This document shows, piece after piece, positions 1 through 48,887 of a stretch of DNA of 50,711 nt (its first letter is position 1; each line of letters begins with the position of its first letter). The stretch lies in contig NW_021834197.1 in the NCBI RefSeq assembly GCF_006345805.1, forward strand, positions 1 through 50,711, given 5' to 3'. Origin of the DNA: Octopus sinensis. Lineage: Eukaryota. Both the position numbers and the translations under genes were made by a program. The notes under the pieces were generated by a model. That model worked only from the letters and a program-made list of their open reading frames with translations. It was not told where the DNA came from and did not search any database.

Positions 1-985
1 AATAGAATAATAATAATAGAATAATAATATAATAAGAAGAAGAAGAAGAAGAATTGGAAGAAGAAGAAGAAGAATAAGAAAGAAGAAGAAGAAGAAGAAT
101 TGGAAGAAGGAGAAGAAGAAGAAGAAGAAGAAGAAGAAGAAAGAAGAATTGGAAGAAGAAAGAGAAGAATAATAATAATAATAATAAGAAGAAGAAGAAG
201 AAGAGGAAATGTTTTTCGAAGTCCAAGGACTTGAAGCAAACATAAAAAGAATGCCAGAGAGAAGATAAAATGAAAGTTGGAGGTCGAAGTAAGACTAAGG
301 GATCGAGAAAGAGATAGAGTGAACGTTAATACTTTTTGAGAGCGGGAAAGAAAGAGAGGGTGAGAGATACAGTAAATGTTCATGCCGTAGAGAGAGAGAG
401 AGAGAGCGTGAACGTAAATGCTAGAGAAAGAGGGAGAGAGAGAAATAGTAATATATGAAGGGAGAAAGCGAAGGACAGAAAAAGGGAGAGAGGAGATAAA
501 TGACTGAAAGAGATAGATAGAGAGAGGGGAAAGAGAAGCAGAGAGACAGAGAGTGGGAAAGAAAGTAAATGAGTGAGTGATTGAGAGACTGATAGAAAAG
601 GTGAAAGGAAGTGAGTTAGAAAGAGAGAGTGGATGAGAGAACGTGTAGATGAAAGAGAGAGAGATAAGAGAACGTGTAGGTGAAAGAGAGAGAGAGAACG
701 TGTAGGTGAAAGAGAGAGTGAGATAAGAGAACGTGTAGGTGAAAGAGAGAGTGAGATAAGAGAACATGTAAGTGAAAGAGAGAGAGAGAGAGATAAGAGA
801 ACGTGTAGGTAAGAGAGAGTGAGATAAGAGAACGTGTAGGTAAGAGTGAGAGAGAGAAAAGAGAGAACGTTAGTAGGTAAGAGATAGAGAGAGAGAGAAA
901 GTACGACAGACAGAACGTGAGAGAGAGAAGGTTGGGAAAAACTCAGAGAGAGAGAGAGAGAGGAAGGGGAGGGAGGAAGAGAGCA
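1..985. repeat. (AAT)n/(AAG)n then GA-rich polypurine tract containing a ~30-bp minisatellite (AGAACGTGTAGGTGAAAGAGAGAGTGAGATAAG-like, about 8 copies, 637-880)
   Basis: Read directly from the sequence. Confidence 0.9.
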
Positions 986-997
986 AACGTAAACGAG

Positions 998-1354
998 TGA
1001 CGTAGTGAGTGTGAGTGTGAGTTGCGACTAAAAGCGGGCAGATGTTGGACGTTGAATAATGAAAGTTCTAGACGAGACTTTGTATGACATCATTGCGAAG
1101 TCTCTTCCGGTGACGTATGTAGGGGGAAGAGAGAGAGAAAGAGGAAGGAGGGAAATAGGTAACAACCTTAGCAAACACACACACAAACACACACATACAT
1201 ATACATATATACATACATGCATGCATACATACACACACACACACGCACGCGCGCGCGCACACACACACCAGCCGCACACACACGCGTATTTTGCAAGAAC
1301 TCCGTAAACTTGCGCTAAATAACTTAAATATAGCGCATTCTGAGACCTCTGTGT

Positions 1355-9364: not shown

Positions 9365-9511
9365 TTAAGGTGACAAAGACGATGATGATGATGGTGATGG
9401 TGGTGGTGGTAGTGGTGGAGTCAGTGATGATGATGATGGCAGTGGTGTTGTTGATGATGGTGGTGGTGATGAGAGTAGTGGTGTTGAAGGTGGTGGTGGT
9501 GGTGGTGGCAA

Positions 9512-9543
<32 letters not shown>

Positions 9544-9760
9544 TTGATGATGATGATGGTGGTGGAGTCAGTGATGATGGTGATGGCGGTGGTGTTGTTG
9601 ACGATGATGATGATGGTGGTGGTCGTGGTGGTGAGGGTAGTGGTGTTGAGGGTGGTGGTGGTGGTGGCAATGACGGTGATGACGATGATGATAACGATAA
9701 CGATGACAATGGTGACGATAATGATAATGATGATAAATGATAATGATTGCAGTGACGAGG
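9365..9760. repeat. (GAT/GGT)n trinucleotide low-complexity block
   Basis: Read directly from the sequence. Confidence 0.9.
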
Positions 9761-12034: not shown

Positions 12035-12572
12035 ATGCCTGATTCAGGAGAAATAGATGTTCTTACACCAACATTAAGTTTACCAGAACGAAGAAGGGCT
12101 GGATTGAAACTGGAATTCGGTTCTTTGAATGTCGTGAGCAAGAAATGCAAACTGGAAAGTTTATCAGCCGATGTCGGCCTGTCTGATATGTCGAACGGTA
12201 CTTTACGCCGGGCGCGAACTATAACCACCAACGAACTGGCCGGACGTTTGTCGTCGGGTCGCGCAAAAAGTATGCTGATTGTTGACTGTCGGCCCTTCTT
12301 GGAGTACAATATGTCACACATACGGGGCGCAATCAACGTCAACTGCATCGATCGGTTAAACCGCAAAAAACTGCAACAAAAGGGTAAAGTGGCTCTGGTC
12401 GACTTGGTCACCACGAAGGAGGGCAAAGAGATGTTTCGGAGACGGTCTGCCAAGGAGATTATCTTGTACGACACTTGTACGAGAGATGAAAGCCACTTAA
12501 GCAGGGACAATGCAATCACAGCCATCCTCAGTTTACTGTACTGGGAGGGAAAAGAGGCATTTATTTTAAAAG
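12035..12572 (+). CDS. DUSP10: Dual-specificity MAPK phosphatase (MKP5-type), coding exon 1: N-terminus plus rhodanese/Cdc25-homology MAPK-binding domain
   Basis: ATG at 12035. The translation contains IVDCRPFLEYNMSHIRGAINVNC, DRLNRKKLQQKGKVALVDLV (KIM) and EGKEAFILKG, closely matching the vertebrate DUSP10 rhodanese domain as I recall it. Donor G|GTGAGT at 12572/12573, phase 1. Confidence 0.95.
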
Positions 12573-12789
12573 GTGAGTTTTTTCAAGGCCTTTTTCTACA
12601 TCTTGTTTTGTTGTTTTGTAAATATATTTGATATTATTTTCGTGTGTTGTTAAGATTTAGGGATCTATTTCATGACTTTGTCAGAGAAGGGGCAGCATTT
12701 ACGACAGCTCTGTTGGATAGGGTCAGCAGCGTATATGAACCCTTCCAGGATTTCCAAGACTGGTTGGTAGGGGCAGTAGTGCCCATGAC

Positions 12790-14140
12790 TTCTTTCGCGG
12801 CTTCAACTGGGGGCAAACAATAACAAAGAAGGACCTATTGTATAACGTAATCATATCTACTTTATATCTGATTAACAGACTGGATAGGCATGTCTGGGAC
12901 ATCTCTGTTCATAAGTGCACCATGGTATCAGATAGAACATCTTTGATCGTGGCTCTACTGGATCAAGCCTGACTTGAGGCCAAACGATAACAAAGACGGA
13001 CACATCAGATAATGCAGTCTCGGGTAACCTATACCTGAATTAATTACAAGATGGTCACAGCAAGATCAGATCTGCCCGATCACAACTGATAGAGCTGAAC
13101 AATGACAACAGAACCATCTTTCGTTTATCTCCATTTGTACAGCACTTCTCATATATTGTGCCATGTATGTTGTTGTACGAATAGCAGGTCAACCCTAAAA
13201 ATGTAGACAGACCCTAAGGTCAAAGGGCATCGTATTTCTTCTCTCTTTTGTTTTCATGTTTAATTTTTGCTTATGAAATAGTGTAACTCCTCACTCACCC
13301 ATTTCTCAAGCCCCAGGAGAAAAGGTGAGAGGTTCTCGAATCAATTCTAACCCTTTACCTTAATGACTGACGAAAGAAAAGTTTTGTGACTCCTTATGCA
13401 GCCCCATCCCTGAAGGGTTTGAGTTGGGGTGATTCCCCTGTTCCCTTCTATCGCTCTACAGCTCGCCAACCTTCCAAATAACCCAGACGAACAGTTTATC
13501 TGATGTCGCCTAAAGATGCGATTTGAGGAAAATTTGGTCGCAGCTTTTAGCATTTGCAAGCCACCACGTAGAGGTCTCTCGTTGATTGGCGGCGAGTGTC
13601 AAATGCTGTTGTTATTTAGCTCCGGGTCAGTCTTGATCCAGGAGACCTATGATCAAAAGCGTTCCAGCTGTGACCACCCCGTCCTTTACTCCGACATAGT
13701 GTATCTAGAACTATATTATCTAACGTGTCCTTCTCTTTCCTGTTGTTGTTGTGTAGCCCAGGGTCAGTCCTGGTCAAGCAGACCTATGATCAAAAGTATT
13801 CCAGCTGTGATTATTTTATCTTTTATTCATAGTGTATCTAGGACTACATTATCTAATGTGTCCCTCCTTGTTGCTGCTGATTAGCCCCAGGTCAGTCCTG
13901 ATCCAGTAGACCTATGTTCAAAGACGTTCCCGCTGCGACCATCCTGTCTTTTATTCTGACACACTATATCTTGGATTTTATAAATCCTTGTTGTTTAGCC
14001 TCCTTGTTGTTTAGCCCCAGGATCTATGATCAAAGGCATTCCTGCTGTGACCACCCTGTCTTTTTATTCAGACATAGTTTCTTGAACTACATTATGTAAT
14101 GTCCTTCCTGATTTCTTTTTATAGACTGTAAGGCTCAATA
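12790..14140. repeat. Repeat family G: degenerate (-) copies 12790-13110 and a (+) tandem array of ~130-bp units at 13615-14140
   Basis: Recurring GGTCAGTCCTGATC..AGACCTATGATCAAAG..TTCCAGCTGTGACC..ATAGTGTATCTAGGACTACATTATCTAATG at 13619, 13756, 13884 and 14013. Further copies lie at 28590-28920. Confidence 0.75.
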
Positions 14141-14189
14141 TGAGAGACATTCAGCTGCTATTTCTAACATGTTGATTGCTCACAGTCTT

Positions 14190-15775
14190 CCTCTTGCAGT
14201 GAGTGCACCAGCTGTTTTTGCACATATTGCACTAATCTGCAGCCCTTGTTCGCTATTCAGTTGCACCCGTGTTTAGTGCTAATGTTGAGAACGTTGCATG
14301 TGTTGTTGGTTGCAGTGGGTGCAATTTCTAAATGTTGCTAATTCAACATTGCAAATTTCATTTGCAGGTATTTACTGTAGTTACGTTTCTGCATTTGATG
14401 TTTTAAAAAGTAGTTGCAGTTGCAGCAAATGCTGTTAATATGAATGCATTAGTTGCACTTATATTTCCGACACTGCACCCGAGTGCAACTGCGATTCCTT
14501 TTAATACAGGTGTAGCTTTTAATTGCAGTCGTACCTGCTCACAATACAGCTATAGATTGCATTTTCAGGTGCATGTGTTAGCAATACCTGTCTACGTATA
14601 TTGCAATTATTAGCGCATATGTTAAAGAAGTAACTGCAAAATGCAGGTGCATGTTTGCAATACAGCTGTAAGTTGCAAATCCAGATTGCACGTGTTAGCA
14701 ATAAAGCTGTATACTGCACAATAACACACGTTAGCAGCACTACCTAAAGGTTGCAAAAGCAGGTGCACATATTAACCATGCACATGTTTACAATTCAGTT
14801 GTAGGTTGTAATTGGTGTTGCTCTTGTTAAAATGCAGAATATTTGCAGCTGTTGGTAGCGATATCGTTGCAGTTTTATTCACAAAGTATATTGTTGCAAA
14901 TATTGCATTTTGTAAATGCAGCAGTCCTTATTACTGCAGATTCAGTTTGATGTTGGATTTTTAGTGGTATGCACCTGCAACCGTGTCACAACTGCAGATG
15001 TTGCAATTGTTTTAGCACCTGCAGCTGTTGTGACGATTGCAACGGTTTTCTACAGCACCTGCGTTTGATTTTGCAACGACTGCAGGTGCAGTTTTTGTCT
15101 GAAGGTGTTACACCATTTGTCCGTTGCTGCAGTTACTGCATTTGTTTTAGTAATATGCAAACATGCTTAATTGTTGCAATGTTTGCAATATTTGTGGCAG
15201 CTGCACCTCTCCCCTTGTTGCATCTATACAGCTGCAATCTTTTGACTGTTAACAAAAAAAAACCCTGCACTTTTAACAAATGCTTCTACAATTGCACCTT
15301 CCATGTGAATTACAAACACGTGCATCTGTAATTTTATTGAATTATTCCTTGCAGCTGTTTGCGTTGTTGCAACTTTTGCAGATGTCTTGCAATTAATGTC
15401 TAAAGTGATTGCACCTGTCGCTGCAAAATTAGCAATTTGCTGTTGCAGTTTACGTATCAATGAATGCAGTTGCATATATTATTGTTGCTGTATCTTTTCT
15501 TCTTCGTTCCCTGGAACCTGTACTATCGCAAAATTCCGTAGGTGTCTTGCAATCAGTGTTGGTTCCTCCGTCGCCGTTGCAATTCGTGCAGGTATCGTTG
15601 CAGCCTGTCTCTTTCGAGTGGTTGCACCTGTCATTGGAATGAATATTCGCAAATTGCTGTTGCGGGCCGCTGTTGTTTCAAGGATTGCAGTTTTGTATAT
15701 ATGTTGTTGGTACGGTTGTTGCAGTTGCATGCATGCATGCTCCAAGACATTTTTTCGTGCACACGATGATGCATT
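14190..15775. repeat. Aperiodic TGCA-enriched cryptic simple sequence
   Basis: About 80 TGCA tetramers by hand count in about 1.6 kb. Confidence 0.8.
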
Positions 15776-15829
15776 TCAAGAGTTTTGGAAACAGTGTGAT
15801 CGTTGTGATATTCTTGAAGATGATGTCAT

Positions 15830-16400
15830 TGATGGTAGGATGGTGGTGGTGGTGGTGTTAGTGGTGGAACTAGTCTTACATATTGTGGTGGTGGTGGTGG
15901 AGCTAGCCAGGCATGTTGTGGTAGTGGTGATAGTAGATGTGTTGCTGTGCTGGTGTTAAGAGATGTGATGGTTGTAGTAGTGTTAGTGGTGGAACCTGTT
16001 GTACATGTGGTTACTGTTAGGCGTGGTGGTTGTGGCGGTGGTAGTAGAGGTTCTAGCGGAGCTGGTCATGCATGTTGTGGTTGTTGTGGTAGTTGTACAT
16101 GTGGTGGTTATAGTGGTGTTAAGCCATACATATTGTTGTGGTGGTAGTTTTGACGGTTGTGGTGGTTGCTGCGGTAGTATGGGCTTGGTAGTTATAGCAG
16201 TGGTGTTTGGTGGTGGTAGTAATAGTAGTATAAGCGGTTGTTGTAGAGGTGATAGTAGTAACTATAGTACTTGTGGTAGTATTTGTAGTGGTGTCACTGT
16301 TTATACATGCTGTGGTTTCGGTTGTAGTATTTATGGTGCTGTCAGATGTCGTATCGTTTGTCATTGATGTTGTAGTATAGGTGGTAGTAGTATGCTGCTA
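15830..16400. repeat. (GGT/GTA/GTT)n low-complexity block
   Basis: Read directly from the sequence. Confidence 0.85.
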
Positions 16401-16506
16401 TTGCACTCTGGGTCAACTCTCACGGAGCAAGGTTCCTTCCATGGCCATCTCTTCGATTTCCTTTCATTGTATGTATTTTAGTACATTATAGTTATTTAGA
16501 TTCGTA

Positions 16507-17070
16507 GTGTGATTTGAGGGAGATTTAGCTGCTATTTCAACCAAATCTAACTGCCACGTAGAGGTCTCCCTCATTGGCCCCTGCATACATATATACATAC
16601 ATAAGACAGTAAGGTGTGATTTGGGGGGGAGATTTAGCTGCTATTTCTAGCATCTCTAGCTACCACTTAGAGGTCTCCCTCATTGGCTCATACATGCATA
16701 CATATATACACAGGGTGTGATTTGAGGGAGATTTGGTGCTATTTCTGCCAGGTCTAGCTACCACGTAGAGGTCTCCCTCATTGGCTCATATATATAGACA
16801 TACACACACACACACACACAGGGTGTGATTTGAGGGAGATTTGGCTGCTATTTCTACCAGCCCTAGCTACCACGTAGAGGTCTCCCTCATTGGATCATAC
16901 ACACACACATATATATATATACACACAGAGTGTGATTTGAGGGAGATTTGGCTGCTATTTCTACCAGGTCTAGCTACCAAGTAGAAGTCCCCCCTCATTG
17001 GCTCATACATACATATATACATACAGGAGGGTGTGATTTGAGGAAGATTTTGGCTGCTATTTCTAGCACC
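16507..17070. repeat. Tandem array of ~105-bp units (GTGTGATTTGAGGGAGATTTGGCTGCTATTTCTA...CCACGTAGAGGTCTCCCTCATTGG)
   Basis: Units at 16507, 16614, 16715, 16823, 16930 and 17031 (last one partial). Confidence 0.92.
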
Positions 17071-17318
17071 CCTGTCTACAATACAAAGGTCAGCCCCACC
17101 CCACCTCTTCAGATGTCGGCAATGATGAGTCAGTCACGTGGTCATGTTTTTGTTTCTGCTATGATGTCATTGTGGATGATAATGTTGTTATTTGTTGATA
17201 ATGCTGATAAACGTGTCTTGCTGCTATCGGTCAGGTTTGTGATGCTGGGTGATGTCATTAGCAACCTTCGTTCTTACTGATGTGTGTGGGTGTGTGTGTT
17301 ACACTCGTTTCTCCTTTG

Positions 17319-17364
17319 TTTGTTTACGTATTTCTTGTTATTTGTACCTTTGGTGACGTCCTAC

Positions 17365-17401
<37 letters not shown>

Positions 17402-17448
17402 TATAGGACGTCACCAAAGGTACAAATAACATGAAATACGTAAACAAA
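17319..17448. repeat. Inverted repeat with 45-bp arms (1 mismatch) around an (AT)n spacer
   Basis: Arms at 17319-17363 and 17404-17448. Confidence 0.92.
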
Positions 17449-17749
17449 GTAGTATAAGCGGTTGTATATATATATATTAATAAATAAAACATATACATAC
17501 ATATATGTACATACCTACATCTATATGTATATATATATATATATAACAAATTAATAAATAAAACATATACATACATACATATATGTACATACCTACATCT
17601 ATATATCTATCTATATATATATATATATATATATATACATAGACGTACTTGTTTGTGTATACATAGATATTTATATAAGGATGTATGTATTTGTATATAC
17701 ATGTGTTCGTGTGTTTATATATCTATGTATGTAAGCACGTGTGCTTGTG

Positions 17750-17781
<32 letters not shown>

Positions 17782-18289
17782 GACTTTTACGTGTGCACAA
17801 ATTTGTTTATATACTCAAGCTTGTATGTATGTATGTTTTCATGTGTCTATATAAATATATCTATCATTGTGTATATGTATGTGTTTGAGTATATAAATAC
17901 ATATATTCGTGTGTTTGTTTTGTTTCGTTTTTTGGTTGTTGTTTTTTGTTTGTTTGTTTTACATGTACTTGTCCATGTTTTTATCTTTTGTTGTTTTAAC
18001 CTTCGACCTTTCACTTCGAACTCTGACCTCGAAACGTCAGATCGTGAAATGTGTCTTGTAAACATGAGTCACAAACACAACACACTAAAGCATAATTTTG
18101 TGTGTGTGTGTGTGTGTTTCGGTGGTCCTCATAAAAAAAGGCTCCTTGGAGTATCGTTCTTACCAAATATAAGGAGTATATAATAAAACTATAAATACAT
18201 GGAGTAATGTACTATGATAGTATGTTTCTCTCTTTGTCTATAATTTTACATATGTAAACATACATGCGTACACACGTGTGTTTGTATTT

Positions 18290-18761
18290 GTGAAATATAC
18301 ATATATATATATATATGTGTGTGTGTGTGTATATATATATGTGTGTGTGGTGTGTGGTATATATATGTGTGTGTGGTGTGTATATATATATGTGTGTGGT
18401 GGTGTGTATATATATATGTGGTGTTGTATATTATGTGTGTGTGTATATATATGTGTGTTGGGTGGTATATATGTGTGTGTGTGTATACATGTGTGTGTGT
18501 ATACATATGTGTGTGTATACATATGTGTGTGTGTATATGTGTGTGTATATATGTGTTGTGTGTTATATGTGTGTGTATATATATATGTGTATATGTGTGT
18601 GTGTATATATATATGTGTATATGTGTGTGTGTATATATATGTGTATATGTGTGTGTGTATATATCTGTGTATATGTGTGTGTGTATATATCTGTGTATAT
18701 GTGTGTGTGTATATATCTGTGTATATATGTGTGTGTGTATATATGTGTGTGTGTGTATATA

Positions 18762-18806
<45 letters not shown>

Positions 18807-18920
18807 ATATATATATATATGTGTGTATATATATATATGTGTGTGTGTGTGTATATATGTGTGTGTGTGTATATATATATGTGTGTGTGTATGTATATAT
18901 ACGCCTGTGTGTATATAATA
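18290..18920. repeat. Compound (TG)n/(TA)n microsatellite
   Basis: Read directly from the sequence. Confidence 0.95.
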
Positions 18921-19392
18921 TATTGATTATACATAGTAGTAACTAGCACACATTAACCTCAAATTGCTTATCCTCATACGTGTAATGAAAATAGTTATAC
19001 GCACGCACACGTGCACACACACATACACAAATACACACACACACACACCACACACACACACAACCCAGTATTTTACATGCTCTTCCGATCCATTCTTCCC
19101 TTCCAAAAAACCTAATCTTACTTTTCTCTCCAAAGTTTATAAAAGTCTTATGACGTCACACACGCAGAGATGCTGGCATTGTAATCGCATGCATCATTAT
19201 GGAATGTTTGTACCTGACGAGAAAAAAAAAATTGCACCTTGCATTCCAGCATATTTCTTGGCGCAATTTGTGCATAATTGAAGTTAATTGATCACTGCAT
19301 CTCAGCCTTGCTTGCGATTGCACTTCGCTACTGCACACATTCTTCATACTGCACTTAGCTACTTTATTGTTTTGCTGAAATTATACCTATAT

Positions 19393-19534
19393 GTGCTAAC
19401 CAACCACATGGTTCCGGGTTCAGTCCCACTGCGTGGCATCTTGGGCAAGTGTCTTCTGCTATAGCCCCGGGCCGACCAATGCCTTATGAGTGGATTTGGT
19501 AGACGGAAACTGAAAGAAGCCCGTCGTATATATG

Positions 19535-19569
<35 letters not shown>

Positions 19570-19772
19570 TTGTCCCCCTAGCATTGCCTGACAACCGATG
19601 CTGGTGTGTTTACGTCCCCGTCACTTAGCGGTTCGGCAAAAAGAGACCGATAGAATAAGTACTGGGCTTACAAAGAATAAGTCCCGGGGTCGATTTGCTC
19701 GACTTAAAGGCGGTGCTCCAGCATGGCCGCAGTCAAATGACTGAAACAAGTAAAAGAGTAAAGAGTATATAT
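19393..19772 (+). mobile_element. SINE-A, slightly 5'-truncated
   Basis: B-box, body and AAAAGAGT tail are present. Confidence 0.88.
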
Positions 19773-20029
19773 AATGTATATATATATGTATGCATGTGTG
19801 TTTAGTATAGTCAATAGTTTTGCATAGTGTGCAATGGTGTTATAAAACTGCAGTTGCGGTGCATGTGCATTTGTCTGGTATGACATATGCAGTGATGTTT
19901 ATTAAATGGATACAATGTGTGCAGCACAATGCATTGTTATGCATTCTGCTGTGCACTTGCATGCATACGTATGAATATGCATACATGCATGCATATATAA
20001 ATACATACCTATATGCACGTACATAAATC

Positions 20030-20480
20030 ACACGCATACACACACACACTCACATGTACACATACACACACACACTCATGTACACACATACGCACACACT
20101 CATGTACACACATACGCACACACACATGTACACACACACACACTCATGTACACACACACACACACACTCATGTACACACACACACACGCACACACACATG
20201 TACACACACACACTCATGTACATACACACGCACACACACACTCATGTACACACACACACGCACACACACACACGCACACACACACTCATGTACACACACA
20301 CGCACACACACACTCATGTACAACACACACACGCACACACACACACGCACACACACACACGCACACACACACTCATGTACACACACACACACACACACAC
20401 TCATGTACACACACACGCACACACACACTCATGTACACACACACGCACACACACACTCATGTACACACACACGCACACAC
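20030..20480. repeat. (CA)n minisatellite with recurring CTCATGTA core
   Basis: Read directly from the sequence. Confidence 0.9.
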
Positions 20481-20894
20481 ATCTTTGCATTTTGAGCATT
20501 CGCCCTTGTTTTAACTTTTAAGATTTTCACCTCCCCTTCCTCTACTCATTTCCTCTCCCTTCTCCATCTCTCCCTGTCTCTCTCTCTCTCTCTCTCACTT
20601 CTATCTTACTCTCTTCCTCTCACTTTACTACGACCACCACCACCACCATCAACTCTGATCCCTCCTCTTCCATCGCCACCACTAAAATCACAGCTGGCCG
20701 CCGTTTCATTGTTTCTTGCCGCCCCCTTCCGTTTGCGTTATACTTCCCCGACACCACCATCACAATAACAATACATCACCGCCACCGCCTCATCACAATA
20801 ACATTACCCCACCACCACCATCTAACAATATAACTACCACTACCACCACTATAACATTACCGCCTCTACCACCACTTCCAGAATCTAGGTTATG

Positions 20895-22859
20895 ATGATG
20901 TCATACTCCATATTTAGCTGTGAAACCCTGACAGCATGGAGTGTACAGGGTGCCAAAAGGGTTGCTAGAAAGAGCAACCAAATCTACTGCTGCTGGATCG
21001 GCGTGGTGGTATAGGAAGGGGTTCTTTGGGGGTCGGGTAGAGACAAATAACAACAAAGGCAGCAAGCAATAACAACAATTATTTCTGGAGCCAACAAGAT
21101 TGCTTGAAATAACAGCTAAATCTATAGAAATTGTTACATGAAGTCTGCTATTGGAGATCAGGGTTAAGCTAGGACTTCACAACAATGCTAACCAGAGGAG
21201 GCACTTGGTAGCTATGTACGTTAGAAATAGCAGCCAAATCACCGTTAGATTATTATAGGAGTTCCTTTACTGGATCAGGATGACCTAGGGTGGATCAACA
21301 ATAGCCTTGATATGTCAATAGGGGAGGTACATAGTGGCTACGTCAGCTAGAAATAGCAGCTAAATCTCTGTTGTATTATCATAGGTCTGCTTTGGAAAGT
21401 CATGCTTGAATAGCTGCTAAATCTCTGAATTGTCATAGAAGGCTTGCTACTGGATCATGACTGACCTGGGGTTAAACAACAACAACAACAATAATAACTA
21501 TCACAACTGATATAGCTACAGCTGGCCAACAAAGGATTCCGCTAAGTGATTGCTAGAAATAGCAGCAACATATCCGTCAAATAATGGTAAATCTGTTGGA
21601 TCAAGGCTGACTTGGAGTTAAATATTACAACTACAGAAGCTGTGATCTAAACAATGAGTACATTCTACGTGGTCGTTGTATATGCTAAAAATAGCAGCTA
21701 AATCTCACTGAAACCGCGTTAGCTTTCTGCCTTAATTTAGGAAAAGATTCCATCAGATGATGACGTCATTCCAAATACATTTAGCTCGATAAGGCGTTGT
21801 GGTCAGGGCTAGAAGGTCTTGTATCATAAGTTTGTTGTTTGTACTAATTTAAGGAAACCTAGGGTTAAATAACAATGACATACCAACAGCATACTCTTTT
21901 ACCCTTTTACTAGTTTCAGTCATTTGACTGCGGCCATGCTGGAGCACCGCCTTTAATCGAGCAACTCGACCCCGGGACTTATTCTTTTTGTAAGCCCAGT
22001 ACTTATTCTATCGGTCTACTTTTGCTGAACCGCTAAGTGACGGGGACATAAACACACCAGCATCGGTTGTCAAGCAATGCTAGGGGAACAAACACACTCA
22101 CACAAACACACACACGCATATATATATATATATATATATACACACAAATACACACACGCATATACATATATATATATACATATATATATCTAATATATAT
22201 ATAATAATATATATATATATATATATAAATACACACACAACCACACACACACATATATATATATACATATATATATATACATATATATGACGGGCTTCTT
22301 TCAGTTTCCGTCTACCAAATCCACTCACAAGGCTTTGGTCGGCCCGGGGCTATAGCAGAAGACACTTGCCCAAGATGCCACGCAGTGGGACTGAACCCGG
22401 AACCATGTGGTTGCTAAACAAGCTACTTACCTCACAGCCACTCCTATGCCTATATTAAACCACACACATACATATATATATATATACATATATACGACGG
22501 GCTTCTTTCAGTTTCCGTCTACCAAATCCACTCACAAGGCTTTGGTCGGCCCGAGGCTATAGCAGAAGACACTTGCCCAAGGTGCCACGCAGTGGGACTG
22601 AACCCGGAACCATGTGGTTGCTAAACAAGCTACTTACCACACAGCCACTCCTGCGCCTCAAGTTTCATATATAAAATTTTAAAAAAATTTGCTTTTAAGG
22701 CAGATCTTCCCACATTCTTCCAATGCCTTTTTTTTCTGTTCTTTTCTTTCTCCTGGTGAGGGTAAGATCTCACTCAATCTATGAAGCTATGTAAATACAA
22801 GGAGAACAACAGCAATTGTAGCATCATCCTGGAATGATGATGTCATGTGCTATATTTAG
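20895..22859. promoter_or_regulatory. Putative intronic CRE(-variant)/MEF2 enhancer modules
   Basis: TGATGTCA+CCATATTTAG (20896-20917), CTAAAAATAG (21685-21694) with ATGACGTCAT (21760-21769), and TGATGTCA+CTATATTTAG (22838-22859). Confidence 0.45.
21893..22658 (-). mobile_element. SINE-A full copy plus tandem extra head
   Basis: Full copy at 21893-22445 and second head at 22495-22658. Confidence 0.88.
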
Positions 22860-23029
22860 CTTTTATTTAAATCCAGGCGTAAACAATTAAATCACGGCTC
22901 TGCAGACTAGCTTAGAATTAATGAAGGCTTTTGATGCGTGTTATAGTGGTAGTCCTGAAGTTTAGCACGCGAAACCCTCTAAGCATTTGCTTTTAAAACA
23001 TAACCTATGGTACACTAATTAAGCCAACC

Positions 23030-23757
23030 TACTAGAAATAGCAGCCAAATCTCCCACAAATTACACCTTACCGTCTTGGGCCATGAGGGAAACCTCTAAG
23101 TGATAGATAAATCTGGAAGAAATAGCAGCCAAATCTCCCTCAAATTACACCTTTCCGTCTTATTAATGTTCATATGTGAAGGAAACCTCTAAGTGATAGA
23201 TAAATGTGGTAGAAATAGTAGCCAAAATCTCCCTCAAATTACACCTTACCGACTTATTAATGTTTGTGTGTATGAGCCAGTGAGGGAAACCTGTAAGTGA
23301 TAGATACATCTGGTAGAAATAGCAGCCAAATCTCCCTCAAATCACACCCTACTGTTTTATGTATGTATATATGAATGTATGAGCCAATGAGGGAGACCTC
23401 TACATGGTAGCTAAGCCTGGTAGAAATAGCAGCCAAATCTCCCTCAAATCACACCCTACTGTTTTATGTATGTATATATGAATGTATGAGCCAATGAGGG
23501 AGACCTCTACATGGTAGCTAGACCTGGTAGAAATAGCAACCAAATCACACCTTACAGTCGTATGCATGTATGTGTGTATGCATGTATGAGCCAATGAGGG
23601 AGACCTCTACATGGTAGCTAGACCTGGTAGAAATAGCAGCCAAATCTCCCTCAAATCACACCCTCCTGCCTTATGTATGTATATATATATAACGGGAAGC
23701 TTTATGAAAATAGACAAAAGACGAAGGCAGGTGGAAAACAAACGAACAATTGTATTA

Positions 23758-23817
<60 letters not shown>

Positions 23818-23900
23818 CATAAGCTAATGAGGGGTTTTTCTACATGGTAGCTAGGCCTGGTTGAAATAGCAGCCATGTAGAGGTCTCCTTCATTGGCTGG
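23030..23900. repeat. Tandem array of the same ~105-bp unit as 16507-17070, in reverse orientation (about 8 units)
   Basis: Recurring TAGAAATAGCAGCCAAATCTCCCTCAAAT(C/T)ACACC...GAGCCAATGAGGGAGACCTCTACATGG. Confidence 0.92.
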
Positions 23901-24390
23901 GATTTTCTTTGTTAAAGAAGGGTATTTAGAAAATCACCTAATTTAATTTTAGGTATATAAGACTCGAAAGGAGAGGAAAAAAAGTGGAACGGTCACGGCT
24001 AGAGCGCTTCTTTAATCAAGCTATGCTGGTGCCAAACAACTGCAGCGGCATCCAGCAATGATGTCATATAACATTAGATATTAAAATCTTAAAATAGATA
24101 ACCCCCCCTCCCCATCTCTGTGTAAGACGGAGCAACTAGGTACGACTTTCATTCACGTCATTCACACACCAACGCCTGTTTTTCCTGTTTTAAGAAGTAC
24201 ACTTTAGATTGATCTCTCGCTCTCTCTCCTTGGCATAAGCTGTTTGGAAACGGAAAACATATGTGCAACTGCAGATAGGTGTGTGTGTGGAAGTTGTATG
24301 TTTGAAATAATGACCTGCAAAACTAAATGCACTTGAGAGGAACGACTGAGATATGTACGGTGGAGAGCAAGTAACGAGGTGGCTTTTTAA

Positions 24391-24710
24391 CCCTTTAGTG
24401 TTCAGATTACTCTGTTAAATGTAATACTTTTTCACTCAAATTGAGTGTTCAGATTAGTGTTCAGATTTAGTGTTCAGATTACTCTGTTAAATGTAATACT
24501 TTTTCACTCAAATTGAGTGTTCAGATTAGTGTTCAGATTTAGTGTTCAGATTACTCTGTTAAATGTAATACTTTTTCACTCAAATTGTTTTGAATTAATC
24601 CTGGATCATCTTACAGCTTTGAGGTTTCAATGATCTGATTACTTATTTTTAGAATGGCATTGTAGGTTAGGTGTGAGAGGATAGACATCGCCAGTTTAAA
24701 CACTAAAGGG
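24391..24710. mobile_element. piggyBac-like MITE with internal tandem expansion
   Basis: TTAA at 24387-24390 and 24711-24714. Perfect 12-bp TIR CCCTTTAGTGTT / AACACTAAAGGG. CCC...GGG ends with TTAA are the piggyBac signature. Confidence 0.85.
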
Positions 24711-24799
24711 TTAAGTATATGGATAGTTGTCTTGGTGGCTTGGCAAGCGGGTAGCTAGATCGGTAGCTGGGTAGCTTGGTAAGTACATGGGTAGGTAGA

Positions 24800-25125
24800 T
24801 ATGTTTCTTTATTAGCCACACAGGGCTGCACGCAGACGGGACAAATTACAAGGTAGAGCTTTTCTTTTGGGAATAAAAAAGGGGGTTTGGTTTTCGATCA
24901 AAAGGGATCGTAAAAGGAAAGAAAGTGGAAAGCAAAAAAAAAAAGAGGGGGGATAAAAATAAAAGGAAAAGGGGAAAAAATGGATCAATAAGGATCGTTA
25001 TCACAGAAATGTCAATATAAAGTGTAAAGGAGAGGAGAGGTGAGGTTTACCCGTGGAAAGAAAAGCCCACGGAAAAGACCACGGTAACCTCGGTCAATGA
25101 AGTCACATGTTATTATTATTATTTT
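24800..25125 (-). mobile_element. Probable LINE 3' end sharing its tail with SINE-B
   Basis: The reverse complement ends CCTTGTAATTTGTCCCGTCTGCGTGCAGCCCTGTGTGGCTAATAAAGAAA. The SINE-B tail is CCTTGTTTGTCCCCTCTGTGTTTAGCCCCTTGTGGGCAATAAAGAAA. The upstream part is unrelated to SINE-B. Confidence 0.5.
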
Positions 25126-25721
25126 TTGCAAATAAGCAACTCTGTATTAATTTTTACGGTTCATAGGATCATAATCAAGGGGGCTTCGTCAGATAGATGG
25201 TTTGGTAAATAGATGGGTACATGACTAGTTGTCTTATGAATTAGTTTGGTACATTGGTAGCTGGGCAGTTTGGATACCAAGGTGGCTTGGTACAGAGATG
25301 AGTTGTTGGCTAAGCGACTTGGTGAGCAGGTGGGTTGGTGGCTAGGTTTCTTGGTCAATAGATGGGTAGACATCTTGATGGTTTGGTCGGTAGGTAGGTA
25401 AATTGCTTGGTAAATAGATGGACGGCTCGTTATCTAGCTAGCTTGTTGAGTTAGAGGTTAATCAGAGAGATAGGTAACTTGATGGATGCATGGAGTGGTA
25501 GCTAGGTGGGTAAGTAGATGATCAGTTAATTATGATTTTATTCAACATATCCTCCTCCAAGATTCTTACATTTATTGCAGCGGCCCCCTTCAATTTTTCT
25601 AAGCCCTTGTAAAAGAATTTGGAAGGTTGGGCTTCCAACCAGGTCTTTCGCGACACCCTTAAAGCCAGGAACCGTAGATAGATAGGTAGATGGATGGATG
25701 GATAGATATATAGATATATAT

Positions 25722-25915
25722 TTCTTTATTGCCCACAAGGGGCTAAACATAGAGGGGACAAACAAGGACAGACAAAGGGATTAAGTCGATTACATCGACC
25801 CCCTACCCAGTGCGAAACTGGTACTTTATTTATCGACCCCGAAAGGATGAAAGGTAAAGTCGACCTCGGCGGAATTTGAACTCAGAACGTAACGACAGAC
25901 GAAATACCGCTAAGA
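25722..25915 (-). mobile_element. SINE-B, head truncated
   Basis: Matches the family B body and tail. Confidence 0.88.
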
Positions 25916-26295
25916 TATATAGATAGATAGATACGGACGGACATTAAGAGAGCTGTAGGCGACTAAGGATTAAGGTTTAAATATTTTAAAATTCATTCTT
26001 AGATATATATCTTGACCGGACATAGCTTTTTTTATAACTCGTCATCTCCTGAAATTAGATAGATGTAGATAAGTAGTTAAGTGGTATGTAAGAGAGAGAA
26101 AACGGACTTTCGTAGAATTCCTGTCTGCCAAAATTCCATTCACAAAGTATTAGTCATCTCGAGACTGTAATCAGAGAAAGAACACTTGCCCCTCCACCAA
26201 CCCACCCAAGACTGCGCTCAAGGATCGCTTGAACCCGGCACCATTTTGTCGTGAATCAAGCTTCTTAACGACGTGTCCAGTTTGTCATTGGCTCC

Positions 26296-26337
<42 letters not shown>

Positions 26338-26499
26338 GTGTGTGTGTGTGTGGTGCCGAGGCGTGCGCCGGTCACACGTCTGACGCGAGCCGACACCGCG
26401 TCTACGTTTATCTGCTGACCCAGTTTCGAAACAGCAGCTGGCAAGACGTAGGATGCGTCATAGGTTAGGATGTGTGGCGGGGTGGATGGTTGAGGTAAG

Positions 26500-27370
26500 G
26501 TAAGATGGCTAGAAAAAGAAAGGTAGGTAGGTAGATAGATGTAGGCAGAGAGAAATAAATTGATAGATTGATAAAAGAAATAGGTAGTTATAGAGGTAGA
26601 TAGGTAAGTAGGTAGGTAGATAGATAGATAGACAGAGGTACAGAGAAAGATGGATAGATAGATAGAGGGTAGAGAGAAATAGGTAGATAGATAGATTGAG
26701 GGTAGAGGGAAATAGATAGATAAGCAGATAGAGAGAGAGGCATAGACAGAGGTACAGAGAAAGATGGATGGATAGATAGATAGAGGGTAGAGAGAAATAG
26801 GTAGATAGATAGATTGAGGGTAGAGGGAAATAGATAGATAGACAGATAGAGAGAGAGAGAGAGAGGCATAGACAGAGGTACAGAGAAAGATGGATAGATA
26901 GATAGAGGGTAGAGAGAAAGATGGATAGATAGATTGATAGAGGGTAGAGAGAAATAGATAGATAGATAGATAGATATGTGTGCATATATGAGAGAGAGAG
27001 AGAGAAATAGATAGATAGATAGATGGAGGGTAGAGAGAAATAGGTAGATAGATAGATTGATAGAGGGTAGAGAGAAATAGATAGAGGGTAGAGATAGATA
27101 GATAGAGGGTAGAGAGAAATAGATAGAGGGTAGAGAGAAATAGATAGATAGAGGGTAGAGAGAAATAGATAGATAGATAGAGGGTAGAGATAGATAGATA
27201 GAGGGTAGAGAGAAATAGATAGATAGAGGGTAGAGAGAAATAGATAGATAGATAGAGGGTAGAGAGAAGTAGGTAGAGAGAAATAGATTGATAGAGGGTA
27301 GAGAGAAATAGGTAGATAGATAGAGGGTAGAGAGAAATAGATAGATAGTGGGTGGAGAGGGATAGACATG
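26500..27370. repeat. (GATA)n/(GA)n compound minisatellite (GAGGGTAGAGAGAAATAGATAGATA-like units)
   Basis: Read directly from the sequence. Confidence 0.92.
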
Positions 27371-28190
27371 TAGTTAGGGTACCTATCTTAAGTTTTTTTC
27401 CATTGTTTAACCGTGGGTCACTTTTGATCACGTAAATCTGAGCTACCGTAACCGAACGTTTCAATGTGTCCATGTTTTGGGGGTTTATTTCTTATTTTTA
27501 TTTATATTTCATTACATTTAGGATGTAATTTGAGGAGGGAATGGTAATTGCTATTTCTAGCTAAGTCGGTCGTGAAACCAGGTAGAGGCGGGGGCTGCTT
27601 AGGTTTTGCGTATGTATGTGTGTGTAATTATGTATTTTTGCATTTGTATGAGCTGTGTATATATGCATGTATAGATGTGTGTAAATGTATATGTATACGT
27701 GTAAACGTGTATATATTTATATTCATGTTCGTGCATATGTCCGTCTGTCTACCTGTCTCTCTGTCTATGTATATACACGCACACGTAATTAATTGATTTT
27801 GTCGAGCTTAATAAAAGCAATTTAACATAAAACTGAATGATCATTCGATACTTTTTGTTGAGTACATATCTATTATATACCTTTACAAGGATTGTGTTGA
27901 CGGAGACTTAATCAGAAACCTGGAAAGTCCTTGAGACCGAAGGTTCCAGAAAATCGATGTAATTCCCGTGTGTATGCGCGGGCGCGCATGTGTTCATAGC
28001 TGTTTATTCATCAAACAGGATAATCTAAGTGTATATAATATATAAAACGACACAAATTCATAAACTAGAATGTTTGTATAACTTTATTGTATCTACGAAG
28101 CAATACCAGATACTCAATGACCAAGATATTCGTACAAATGTATTTGTGAAACAACACACATATAATATAATCTTCCGTTTCTATTTGCAG

Positions 28191-28370
28191 GGGGTTTACG
28201 GGAATTCAAGTCAAAACACGAAAATCTATGCGACAATTTACTATGGATGCCGTCAGAATGTCGTTTGTTATCGTCAGAGTGTCGTATAGTACACAGTCCT
28301 TTGACGCCATTAGTTGAACATCAAATCGAAGCAGCCGAGGTTTCACGAATATTGCCTTTTCTCTATTTAG
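28191..28370 (+). CDS. DUSP10: DUSP10 coding exon 2 (180 nt, phase 1-1): end of rhodanese domain, linker, start of catalytic domain
   Basis: Acceptor TTTGCAG| at 28190 and donor TTAG|GTGAGA at 28370. Reads (G)GLREFKSKHENLCDN...IEAAEVSRILPFLYL(G), in frame with exon 1. Human DUSP10 has LKGGLSSFKQNHENLCDN...IENAELTPILPFLFLG. Not in the ORF track because it has no in-frame start long enough. Confidence 0.95.
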
Positions 28371-30212: not shown

Positions 30213-30398
30213 GTAACGAGCGAGATGCTGGTAATTTACAAATTCTGAAAGAGTTAGATATAACTTATATTTTAAATGTCACGTCACATGTTCGACCCCA
30301 TTTCGAGAGTCAAGGCATTCATTACAAAACGATACCAGTAACGGACAGCGGTCACCAAAATCTACGGAAGTACTTTGATGATGCCATAGAATATATAG
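30213..30398 (+). CDS. DUSP10: DUSP10 coding exon 3 (186 nt, phase 1-1): DSP catalytic domain N-half with general-acid Asp
   Basis: Acceptor TTTCAG| at 30212 and donor ATAG|GTAAAT at 30398. Reads (G)NERDAGNLQILKELDITYILNVTSHVRPHFESQGIHYKTIPVTDSGHQNLRKYFDDAIEYI. Asp284 lies in PVTDS. Confidence 0.95.
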
Positions 30399-35853: not shown

Positions 35854-35966
35854 CCTGATGATGATATTTTTCTTGAAGTTTGTAAATTTCTTATGATGTC
35901 AACAACAAAAAATTCTGTTCATTTTATCTTAGATTTTAATTTTCTTTTCCTTTTGTTTATTTGCAG

Positions 35967-36241
35967 ATGAGGCCAAACGAAACGGCGCCAAGATCTTAAT
36001 CCATTGTCAAGCTGGGGTATCACGGTCGGCAACGGTGACCATCGCATATTTATTGAAACACTCCACCCTCAGTATGACAGATGCTTACCGATACGTAAAG
36101 CAGAAGCGTGCCATCATTTCGCCGAATTTTAACTTCATGGGACAACTTATGGAGTTTGAACAATCCTTAAACAACGGACTCTCGCCTCGAATCCATGAGA
36201 AATCCCGAGAAGAGTTTGATGAGATTGACCGCTGGTTATAG
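35967..36241 (+). CDS. DUSP10: DUSP10 coding exon 4: active-site P-loop and C-terminus, stop TAG
   Basis: Polypyrimidine tract plus TTGCAG| at 35966. Reads (D)[31 protein letters not shown]...[27 protein letters not shown]...RWL*. Catalytic Cys315 codon at 36005-36007, 31 residues after Asp284. Spliced CDS is 538+180+186+275=1179 nt, i.e. 392 aa. Confidence 0.96.
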
Positions 36242-47812: not shown

Positions 47813-47997
47813 ACTCTTACCCACTCATACACAAACACACACGTATATATTTTTAGGCACACACCCACACATCTCACACACAAAGCATTCCAAAAATAAC
47901 ACACACATTACAATACTCTCTCACACACACACACACTCTGAACTTTATCCCAACTTCGAACATATTATGAAGCCTTCCATTCTTTCTCCTTTCTTCT

Positions 47998-48181: not shown

Positions 48182-48212
<31 letters not shown>

Positions 48213-48845: not shown

Positions 48846-48887
48846 GGGGGGAGGGCTGTTGTTTTTTGCCCCCAGGAAAGTCCTTTG

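What the first reader, a model, noticed from the sequence alone, without database searches (positions are those of the whole stretch)
15820..24067. Eight TGAYGTCA sites spaced about every kilobase through central intron 1
Sites lie at 15821, 17162, 17250, 19151, 20896, 21761, 22838 and 24059. Six are in the 10-mer ATGAYGTCAT, and all six TGATGTCA are in the same orientation. A rough composition-based expectation is below one in 8.3 kb. The flanks are mostly non-homologous. TGACATCA/TGATGTCA is the established Jun/ATF2 site of the c-jun promoter, and ATF2/Jun are p38/JNK substrates, so this could be a distributed feedback enhancer for a p38/JNK phosphatase. Caveats: GAT-rich context favours the prefix, and TGATGTCA is also the CpG-decay product of a CRE.
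Basis: partly seen in the sequence, partly recalled or inferred. Interest (0 to 1): 0.7.

Follow-up and report, generated by a model that had tools for sequence, protein, structure and literature searches.

The report
Intronic ATF/CRE-type site cluster in DUSP10
Eight copies of a known stress-factor (Jun/ATF/CREB-type) DNA motif really are crowded into the big intron of a stress-kinase phosphatase gene, most likely as ordinary feedback enhancer sites, but their function and conservation could not be tested here.

Summary
TGAYGTCA lies at all eight stated positions, all six TGATGTCA are on the + (sense) strand, and six sites are the 10-mer ATGAYGTCAT. All eight lie in non-repeat DNA. Markov models of order 0-4 expect 0.2-0.8 sites. 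TGATGTCA is the most over-represented non-microsatellite 8-mer in the window.

The gene is a DUSP10/MKP-5 (fly puckered) type phosphatase. The sites sit in the 15.6-kb intron between coding exons 1 and 2.

New here: the only other ATGAYGTCAT in the 50.7 kb (1084-1093, minus strand) lies in a ~140-bp block conserved with another species' DUSP10 locus, next to an ETS site and CRE-like sites. This is probably the promoter. Two further orthologous loci also carry TGAYGTCAT upstream of exon 1. Site 22838 copies the c-jun promoter's ATF/Jun–MEF2 arrangement.

The flanks are mostly unrelated, apart from short extensions in two pairs. Spacing is irregular (88-1901 bp). The snoRNA, transposon and RNA-motif readings failed.

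Best reading: a homotypic cluster of bZIP sites acting as intronic stress-response enhancer(s). This is a new member of a known kind. Binding, activity and conservation of the intronic sites remain untested.

The parts
15820..15829 (+). ATGATGTCAT site. It lies at the 5' edge of a cryptic (GGT/GTT)n tract.
17161..17170 (+). ATGATGTCAT site. It lies 29 bp downstream of an AP-1 TRE and an E-box (ATGATGAGTCAGTCACGTGGTCATG, 17122-17146).
17250..17258 (+). TGATGTCAT site (G at position -1)
19151..19158 (.). Palindromic CRE TGACGTCA. It shares 18 nt of upstream context (AAGTTTRTAAANNTCTTA) with site 35894.
20895..20917 (+). ATGATGTCAT, a 4-nt spacer, then CCATATTTAG (9/10 match to the MEF2 consensus YTAWWWWTAR)
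21760..21769 (.). Perfect palindrome ATGACGTCAT. A canonical MEF2 consensus CTAAAAATAG lies 76 bp upstream (21685-21694).
22837..22859 (+). ATGATGTCA-TGTG-CTATATTTAG: an ATF/Jun-type site followed by a perfect MEF2 consensus after a 4-nt spacer, the same order and spacing as the c-jun promoter
   Evidence: PMC2441799, PMC3392945
24058..24067 (+). ATGATGTCAT site. Its wider context GCAATGATGTCATATAA matches the reverse complement of the promoter site at 1085 in 16 of 17 positions.
17126..17132 (.). AP-1 TRE TGAGTCA. A second copy lies at 18065-18071.
981..1118 (.). Putative promoter block conserved with L004:677-823. It reads TGACGTA ... ATGACATCATTGC (site 1085, minus-strand TGATGTCA) ... CTTCCGG (ETS) TGACGTAT. 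CpG o/e is 1.14 in 1-2000.
12035..12572 (+). DUSP10-like coding exon 1 (start codon, rhodanese domain)
12573..28190 (+). The 15.6-kb intron that holds the cluster
28191..28370 (+). Coding exon 2 (...ILPFLYLG)
30213..30398 (+). Coding exon 3 (DSPc domain, N-terminal part)
35967..36241 (+). Coding exon 4 (HCQAGVSRS active site, stop codon)

Best explanation
The eight sites are a homotypic cluster of bZIP (ATF/Jun/CREB-type) binding sites. Their consensus is (G)ATGAYGTCAT, a full CRE palindrome or its CpG-to-TpG derivative. They are scattered through the unique DNA of the large intron of a DUSP10/puckered-type p38/JNK phosphatase gene.

The likely mechanism is as follows. Stress-kinase or cAMP signalling activates ATF2/Jun-type or CREB-type dimers, and MEF2 at some sites. 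These dimers bind the conserved promoter site and the intronic sites, raise transcription of the phosphatase, and the phosphatase then switches the kinases off. This is a negative feedback loop.

Shown here: the sites exist, they are over-represented and clustered, the gene is of DUSP10 type, and one promoter copy of the motif is conserved.

Inferred only: binding, enhancer activity, the identity of the factor, and the feedback logic.
For: - The 8-mer and the 10-mer are far above every background model tried.
- All eight sites lie in non-repeat DNA.
- Every ATGAYGTCAT in the 50.7 kb is either in the cluster or in the conserved promoter-like block at 981-1118.
- The flanking bases fit a 10-bp rather than an 8-bp specification: A at -1 in 6 of 8 sites (p = 0.013) and T at +1 in 7 of 8 (p = 0.0016).
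- The region is also rich in CRE half-sites: 0.97 TGACGT per kb against 0.28 outside. It holds two AP-1 TREs, one of them 29 bp upstream of site 17162.
- Orthologous loci carry the same 9-mer upstream of exon 1. L004 has 3 sites in 3.4 kb. L005 reads ATGATGTCATG-N18-CTATATTTAG-N7-ATGACCTCAT...TGACGTG-TATATAT.
- Site 22838 has the c-jun promoter's ATF/Jun-4 nt-MEF2 layout. All four downstream sites have a MEF2 match of at least 9/10 within 30 nt.
- An identical core with decayed flanks is what constraint on the motif would leave.
- Literature: ATF2 is needed for Dusp10 expression (PMC3080913), and puc/DUSP10 is an AP-1 feedback target (PMC10552427).
Against: - There are no binding, chromatin or expression data.
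- Conservation of the intronic sites could not be tested.
- The one orthologue with a complete intron (L001, 51% amino-acid identity) has a single site in it, so the intronic cluster is not ancient.
- The window is repeat-rich and cryptically simple, so Markov nulls are optimistic. Another tract (14.2-15.75 kb) yields equally strong 8-mer clusters.
- Some sites are not independent: 20896/22838/21761 share context, and 15821/17162 share GATGTCATTG-TGG. The number of independent origins may be about five.
- After Bonferroni correction over all 8-mers, frequency alone gives about 0.06.
- In L001 the three upstream CREs sit inside a ~410-bp repeat family, which shows that repeats can spread this motif.
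- The MEF2 association is not significant over all 13 sites.
Confidence: 0.45

Rival explanations
1. The sites are a non-functional by-product of local sequence evolution. They would be relics of short local duplications, cryptic (GAT/GGT)n-type simple sequence or decayed repeat fragments that happened to carry the motif, with no regulatory role.
For: - Sub-groups share short extended context: 20896/22838/21761, 19151/35894, and 15821/17162 with TGTCATTG, which also occurs at 15629 and 16359.
- Four sites (9325, 15821, 20896, 48940) lie within 100 bp of (GGT)n or (ACC)n tracts.
- In L001 the CREs are carried by a ~410-bp repeat.
- A uniform orientation is what direct duplication would give.
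- The window has other 8-mer clusters born of cryptic repeats.
Against: - Over all site pairs, flank similarity equals the null: mean 0.81 against 0.76. Only two of the 77 pairs tested stand out, and only over 10-18 nt.
- A profile of the shared module finds no further copies in the window.
- Markov models up to order 4, trained on the region itself, still expect fewer than 1 site.
- There are no transposon protein remnants.
- If the copies are old duplicates, survival of a 10-13-mer amid randomised flanks itself argues for constraint.
- The same 10-mer sits in a conserved promoter block.
Confidence: 0.28
2. The cluster is chance plus post-hoc choice of motif and boundaries in a compositionally odd, GAT/TG-rich intron.
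For: - Bonferroni over all 8-mers leaves about 0.06 for frequency alone.
- Simulated Markov sequences often yield some semi-complex 8-mer with at least 8 copies.
- The region's boundaries were set by the sites themselves.
- The 6:0 orientation is only p about 0.03.
Against: - The motif is one of the handful of best-known transcription-factor sites, not one picked from 65,000 8-mers.
- Frequency, clustering (p about 0.004-0.01), flank bias (p = 0.013 and 0.0016) and enrichment of half-sites are partly independent signals.
- The 10-mer gives 8 matches against 0.71 expected.
- The same motif recurs at the DUSP10 loci of three other species.
Confidence: 0.15
3. The motif acts at the RNA level on the sense strand, for example as box C (AUGAUGA) of intronic C/D snoRNAs or as a pre-mRNA protein-binding motif UGAUGUCAU.
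For: - All six non-palindromic sites are on the sense strand.
- Three sites begin with ATGATGA, which matches box C.
Against: - No box D with a terminal stem lies at a snoRNA-like distance.
- Rfam finds nothing at any site, at gathering score or at E up to 10.
- In the orthologous loci the non-palindromic copies are on the antisense strand (L001 x2, L004 x1), and the conserved promoter copy at 1085 is also antisense.
- Two sites are perfect DNA palindromes.
Confidence: 0.03
4. The sites are real binding sites, but for another factor class or another role. Examples are TALE homeodomain factors (TGAT plus TGTCA), or CRE-plus-TATA-like cores (ATATTTAG) of alternative intronic promoters that would give N-terminally truncated isoforms.
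For: - TGATGTCA contains the TGTCA (MEIS/TGIF) core and the TGAT (PBX) half-site. This rests on general knowledge.
- Sites 20896 and 22838 have a TATA-like ATATTTA 5-6 nt downstream.
Against: - Two sites, and several orthologous ones, are the intact palindrome TGACGTCA, which fits bZIP and not TALE factors.
- The region is enriched in TGACGT half-sites and TREs.
- The conserved promoter block pairs the motif with CRE-like TGACGTAT.
- A CRE only 5-6 nt from a TATA box is closer than in classical CRE promoters.
Confidence: 0.09

Closest known systems
c-jun promoter jun1 TRE/ATF site with adjacent MEF2 site (targets of Jun/ATF2 and MEF2; p38/JNK-responsive)
   Same: The core is TGACATCA, the reverse complement of TGATGTCA. 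At 22838 the layout is TGATGTCA-TGTG-CTATATTTAG, against TGACATCA-TGGG-CTATTTT... in c-jun (PMC2441799, PMC3392945), so order and the 4-nt spacer are the same. p38 acts on the c-jun promoter through the AP-1 and MEF2 sites (PMC2628930).
   Different: The octopus sites are intronic, there are eight of them, and they lie in a phosphatase gene. Only one site has a perfect MEF2 partner and one has a 9/10 match. The central dinucleotide is TG rather than CA relative to the MEF2 site. The last three bases of the c-jun MEF2 site (…TAG) are recalled from memory, not read in a paper held here.
AP-1 to puckered (Drosophila DUSP10 orthologue) negative feedback loop
   Same: The target is a JNK/p38-type MAP-kinase phosphatase of the DUSP10 family with AP-1/ATF-type input. 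DUSP10 is named as the human orthologue of Puc, and puc as a transcriptional target of JNK/AP-1 (PMC10552427).
   Different: Nothing here shows induction or binding. The fly elements were not compared at sequence level.
ATF2/ATF7-dependent expression of mammalian Dusp1, Dusp8 and Dusp10
   Same: The same gene family and the same proposed factor. Atf2-/- neurons have less Dusp10 mRNA and less MKP5 protein (PMC3080913).
   Different: The paper read here does not map the mammalian cis-elements. The octopus case rests on sequence alone.
E-selectin PDII (NF-ELAM1) ATF2 site TGACATCATTG
   Same: The 11-mer CAATGATGTCA is identical to site 24059, to the conserved promoter site at 1085 and to L004:788 (PMC4973847).
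   Different: It is a single promoter site in a vertebrate cytokine-response gene, not a cluster.
Homotypic clusters of transcription-factor binding sites in enhancers and promoters
   Same: Several copies of one motif lie within a few kb of non-coding DNA near or inside the regulated gene.
   Different: The density here (about 1 per kb physical, about 2 per kb of unique DNA) is lower than in classical compact enhancers. The sites may belong to two or three separate elements: 17.1-17.3 kb, 20.9-24.1 kb, and the singles.

Membership tests
CRE/ATF-type bZIP binding-site cluster (enhancer) | Match to TGACGTCA or its Jun/ATF2 variant TGACATCA/TGATGTCA | tested here: met
   Eight exact matches, six of them as ATGAYGTCAT. 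The variant is documented as a Jun/ATF2 site in PMC2441799 and PMC4973847.
CRE/ATF-type bZIP binding-site cluster (enhancer) | More sites than the background sequence gives, and clustered | tested here: met
   Eight sites against 0.2-0.8 expected. TGATGTCA is the top non-microsatellite 8-mer. Scan p is 0.004-0.01. Caveat: only window-internal backgrounds were available, not a genome-wide one.
CRE/ATF-type bZIP binding-site cluster (enhancer) | Sites conserved in related species beyond flank level | not testable with these tools
   No orthologous contig covering 15.8-24.1 kb could be found. The close relative's contigs reach only to 13.7 kb. The promoter copy at 1085 is conserved with L004.
CRE/ATF-type bZIP binding-site cluster (enhancer) | Factor occupancy and site-dependent enhancer activity | not testable with these tools
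   This needs CUT&Tag or ATAC and reporter assays.
AP-1/ATF to MAP-kinase-phosphatase negative feedback (puc / Dusp10 type) | The target gene is a p38/JNK-class MKP | tested here: met
   Rhodanese and DSPc domains are present. The best solved-structure matches are DUSP10 for both domains: 190 bits against 157 or less for other DUSPs. Substrate preference is inferred from orthology.
AP-1/ATF to MAP-kinase-phosphatase negative feedback (puc / Dusp10 type) | The gene is induced by the pathway that it inhibits | not testable with these tools
   No expression data are available.
c-jun-type ATF/Jun-MEF2 composite element | TGAYRTCA followed after about 4 nt by YTAWWWWTAR | tested here: inconclusive
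   The match is perfect at 22838 and 9/10 at 20896, both with a 4-nt spacer. L005 has the same two motifs 20 nt apart. The other sites lack it, and over all 13 sites the association is not significant.
Dispersed repeat / transposon-derived copies | Homology of flanks over tens to hundreds of bp, further copies elsewhere, and transposon protein remnants | tested here: not met
   The sites lie outside the TRF and self-BLAST masks. Flank scores equal the null except for two pairs over 10-18 nt. An nhmmer profile finds no other copy. Pfam finds nothing. No genome-wide repeat library was available.
Box C/D snoRNA | Box C RUGAUGA, box D CUGA 60-120 nt downstream, and a terminal stem | tested here: not met
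   A box-C-like ATGATGA occurs at three sites only. There is no box D with a terminal stem and no Rfam match.
Regularly spaced (periodic) array | Constant spacing or a repeating unit | tested here: not met
   The intervals range from 88 to 1901 bp, and there is no unit homology.

The most novel reading that the evidence does not exclude
The c-jun-type stress module (a Jun/ATF2 site next to a MEF2 site, together with ETS and CRE) may be an ancient bilaterian 'SAPK-response' grammar. On this reading cephalopods have multiplied it into a distributed, same-orientation array through the intron of their DUSP10/puckered gene. The phosphatase's feedback gain would then be set by the number of intronic modules rather than by one compact enhancer.
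Probability: 0.12. Interest if true: 0.55.

Novelty: new member of a known kind. Interest (0 to 1): 0.36.

Why it matters
If the sites work, they would show that the AP-1/ATF to MAP-kinase-phosphatase feedback loop known from flies (puckered) and mammals (ATF2 to Dusp10) also operates in a cephalopod. They would also give concrete, mutable cis-elements for studying stress signalling in an animal group with almost no characterised enhancers: the promoter block at 981-1118 and the intronic sites at 17.1-17.3 and 20.9-24.1 kb. This would extend a known principle rather than reveal a new one.

Tried and rejected
1. Intronic C/D snoRNAs. Three sites carry ATGATGA, but there is no box D or terminal stem, and Rfam finds nothing at gathering score or at E up to 10.

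2. Transposon or dispersed-repeat origin. The sites lie outside the TRF and self-BLAST masks. BLAST, local and anchored flank comparisons give only two short pairs. An nhmmer profile of the 20.9-24.1 kb module finds no other copy. Pfam finds nothing in the ten longest ORFs.

3. Ancient ~1-kb tandem units or a large inverted duplication. There is no unit homology. The inverted 109-bp satellite arrays (16.5-17.1 and 23.0-23.7 kb) are in the wrong order, and the motif orientation is not mirrored.

4. Conservation test using spurious ORFs over and near the sites as probes for Logan contigs of related species. Two chimeric protein searches gave no hit. The contigs of the close relative (L002, L003) cover only 11.7-13.7 kb.

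5. Sense-strand RNA motif. The orientation is reversed in the orthologous loci.

6. A family-wise simulation of 'maximum count of any complex 8-mer'. It was poorly calibrated, because semi-low-complexity words with high expectation dominate it, so it was not used as evidence either way.

7. Identifying the species from the run accessions in the literature. No paper mentions them.

8. Han & Prywes 1995 (PMC230521), which gives the full c-jun MEF2 site, is not held.

Full report
**Observation**

TGAYGTCA occurs at 15821, 17162, 17250, 19151, 20896, 21761, 22838 and 24059. The six TGATGTCA copies are all on the + strand. The copies at 19151 and 21761 are the palindrome TGACGTCA. Six of the eight sites are the 10-mer ATGAYGTCAT. 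Five further 8-mer sites lie elsewhere in the window: 1085-, 9325+, 35894+, 42491- and 48940.

**Is it more than chance?**

- Markov models of order 0 to 4, trained on the region or on the whole window, expect 0.2-0.8 sites in the 8,248 bp.
- The tool's dinucleotide shuffles of the whole window give 5.5 +/- 3.0 matches against 16 observed for the 8-mer. For the 10-mer they give 0.71 against 8.
- TRF plus self-BLAST mask 55% of the region, and all eight sites fall in the unmasked 3.7 kb.
- In the 23.3 kb of unmasked window, TGATGTCA occurs 8 times against 0.86 expected (order 3), p = 3.4e-6. It ranks eighth of all 8-mers, and the seven above it are all microsatellite remnants.
- Bonferroni correction over about 16,000 8-mers leaves about 0.06 for frequency alone.
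- Clustering is partly independent of frequency: scan p is 0.01, or 0.004 in unmasked coordinates.
- The flank bias is also partly independent: A at -1 in 6 of 8 sites (p = 0.013) and T at +1 in 7 of 8 (p = 0.0016).
- So is the enrichment of TGACGT half-sites: 0.97 per kb in the region against 0.28 outside.
- I regard the cluster as non-random. The caveat is that this window is cryptically simple. A TGCA-rich tract at 14.2-15.75 kb produces 8-mer clusters of equal strength, so window-internal nulls are optimistic.

**Setting**

- ORFs at 12035 and 30143 hit the Rhodanese and DSPc families.
- I built a four-exon model: 12035-12572, 28191-28370, 30213-30398 and 35967-36241. It encodes 392 amino acids with the HCQAGVSRS active site.
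- The best matches among solved structures are DUSP10 for both the catalytic and the rhodanese domains.
- The cluster therefore lies in the middle of the 15.6-kb intron between coding exons 1 and 2 of a DUSP10/MKP-5-type gene, on the sense strand.

**Are the sites copies of one another?**

Mostly they are not.

- BLAST of +/-300 bp, local alignment of +/-100 bp, and anchored alignments of the flanks give a mean score equal to the null.
- There are two exceptions. Sites 20896 and 22838, and more weakly 21761, share ATGATGAYGTCAT-N5-8-A(T/C)ATTTAGCT. Site 19151 shares 18 nt upstream with 35894.
- Sites 15821 and 17162 share GATGTCATTG.TGG within a T/G-rich cryptic tract.
- The number of independent origins is probably about five rather than eight. 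That also removes most of the weight of the 6:0 orientation, which was only p about 0.03 to begin with.
- A profile of the 20.9-24.1 kb module finds no other copy in the window or in the loci.
- The ORFs of the region have no Pfam match.
- Spacing is irregular, from 88 to 1901 bp.

**Alternatives tested**

- Three sites start with ATGATGA (box C). There is no box D or terminal stem, and Rfam finds nothing.
- A sense-strand RNA motif is unlikely. In the orthologous loci the non-palindromic copies are antisense.
- CpG o/e is 0.63 in the region and 0.65 in the window. CpG decay of ancestral TGACGTCA into TGATGTCA is therefore plausible. TG exceeds CA on the + strand (334:242), which mildly favours the observed orientation.

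**Evidence from other species**

Exon 1 found four relatives in public assemblies.

- The nearest relative (97% amino-acid identity; L002 and L003) aligns only over 11.7-13.7 kb.
- Two chimeric searches, using spurious ORFs over and near the sites as probes, found no contig for the region. Conservation of the intronic sites is therefore untested.
- The orthologous loci are still informative.
- L004 (73% amino-acid identity) has TGACGTCA at 690 and 1502 and TGACATCA at 788, all upstream of exon 1.
- Window 981-1118 aligns with L004:677-823, with z = 9.9 against shuffles and 0 of 1,500 random window segments reaching the score.
- The conserved block reads TGACGT(C)A ... AAAAGCG.GGCA ... GAATAAT ... 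ATGACATCATTGC, then 6-7 nt, then CTTCCGG (ETS) and TGA(TGA)CGTAT.
- That block holds site 1085, the only ATGAYGTCAT in the window outside the cluster. It sits in the most CpG-rich part of the window, with o/e 1.14. I take it to be the promoter. A non-coding first exon may follow it, so the 'intron 1' of the finding may be intron 2.
- L005 (51% amino-acid identity) has a promoter-like string just upstream of its exon: ATGATGTCATG-N18-CTATATTTAG-N7-ATGACCTCAT ... TGACGTG-N4-TATATAT.
- L001 (51% amino-acid identity, compact gene) has three TGACGTCA, each followed by CCGGAAGTG, 4.5-6.8 kb upstream. These sit inside a ~410-bp repeat family. Its intron holds only one site.
- In sum, the motif is tied to DUSP10 loci in four species, but the intronic cluster itself is not ancient.

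**A composite element**

- The sequence shared by 20896 and 22838, ATATTTAG, is part of a MEF2 consensus (YTAWWWWTAR).
- Site 22838 reads TGATGTCA-TGTG-CTATATTTAG. Site 20896 reads TGATGTCA-TACT-CCATATTTAG.
- The c-jun promoter reads TGACATCA-TGGG-CTATTTT... (PMC2441799, PMC3392945). Its AP-1/ATF and MEF2 sites both convey p38 signals (PMC2628930).
- The only two CTAWWWWTAG sequences in the window are at 22850 and at 21685, which is 76 bp from site 21761.
- All four downstream sites have a MEF2 match of at least 9/10 within 30 nt. The null rate is 0.24 per site.
- Over all 13 sites the association is not significant, so this is a lead and not a result.

**Interpretation**

- The best-supported reading is a homotypic cluster of ATF/Jun/CREB-type bZIP sites. 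It serves, together with the conserved promoter sites, as stress- or cAMP-responsive input to a p38/JNK phosphatase, which makes a negative feedback loop.
- This loop is known in flies, where puc is the DUSP10 orthologue and an AP-1 target (PMC10552427). It is also known in mice, where ATF2 loss lowers Dusp10/MKP5 (PMC3080913).
- TGACATCA is a documented Jun/ATF2-type site (PMC2441799, PMC4973847).
- Which bZIP factor binds, whether any does, and whether the DNA enhances transcription are all inference.
- The main rival is a functionless by-product of local duplication and cryptic simplicity.
- I put the enhancer reading at about 0.45, the by-product reading at about 0.28, chance at about 0.15, and the rest on other factor classes or RNA-level roles.

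**Verdict**

It would be a new member of a known kind. It is of moderate interest, mainly as a testable handle on cephalopod stress-response regulation.

Noticed in passing
window 981-1118 (with L004:677-823): A ~140-bp non-coding block is conserved between the window and a species with 73% exon-1 identity. It holds TGACGTA, ATGACATCATTGC, an ETS site (CTTCCGG) and TGACGTAT, in the most CpG-rich part of the window. It is probably the DUSP10 promoter, 11 kb upstream of the start codon, which would imply a non-coding first exon.
   Followed up: partly
window 14200-15750: A cryptic, degenerate TGCA-rich tract. CAGGTGCA/CGGGTGCA (E-box CAGGTG) occurs 9 times on both strands, together with many TTGCA and CAGCTG words and short inverted repeats. 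Neither TRF nor self-BLAST masks it.
   Followed up: partly
window 16506-17091 and 23027-23690: Two arrays of the same ~107-109-bp tandem repeat lie in opposite orientation and bracket much of the motif cluster. Their order and the motif orientation do not fit a simple inverted duplication.
   Followed up: partly
window 17322-17445: A near-perfect inverted repeat with ~45-nt arms around (AT)16. Each arm carries a TGACGT half-site, so the two half-sites mirror each other. Rfam gives only sub-threshold low-complexity 'miRNA' matches here. It looks like a hairpin or a MITE-like element.
   Followed up: no
window 15840-16400, 20716-20890, 9381-9750, 47870-48910: Long cryptic triplet tracts, (GGT/GTT/GAT)n or their complement (ACC)n, give long spurious ORFs (VVVV, TTTT, PPPP). 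Four TGAYGTCA sites (9325, 15821, 20896, 48940) lie within 100 bp of such tracts.
   Followed up: partly
window 41067-41473: Six TGARGTCA words (TGAGGTCA or TGAAGTCA, a nuclear-receptor half-site AGGTCA) lie within 400 bp, all on the + strand. They are probably units of a tandem repeat downstream of the coding region.
   Followed up: no
L001:1500-6300: A ~410-bp repeat family lies upstream of the DUSP10 orthologue of a distant species. Three units keep TGACGTCATG followed after 11 nt by CCGGAAGTG (CRE plus ETS), as if a promoter-like module had been amplified.
   Followed up: partly
L005:460-560: A promoter-like string lies upstream of another orthologue's first coding exon: ATGATGTCATG, a MEF2 consensus CTATATTTAG, ATGACCTCAT (similar to the jun2 TRE, as recalled), TGACGTG and TATATAT, all within 100 bp.
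   Followed up: partly
window 35894-35901: A TGATGTCA lies 65 bp upstream of coding exon 4 and shares 18 nt of upstream context with the intronic CRE at 19151 (anchored p = 4e-5). It may be a short duplicated fragment.
   Followed up: partly
window 4788-5274, 5858-6516, 22267-22652: Tandemly repeated copies (179-207-bp periods) of short dispersed repeats that may be SINE-type elements; the repeat at 4788-5274 recurs in opposite orientation at 22267-22652, inside the intron. About 54% of the window is tandem or dispersed repeat.
   Followed up: no
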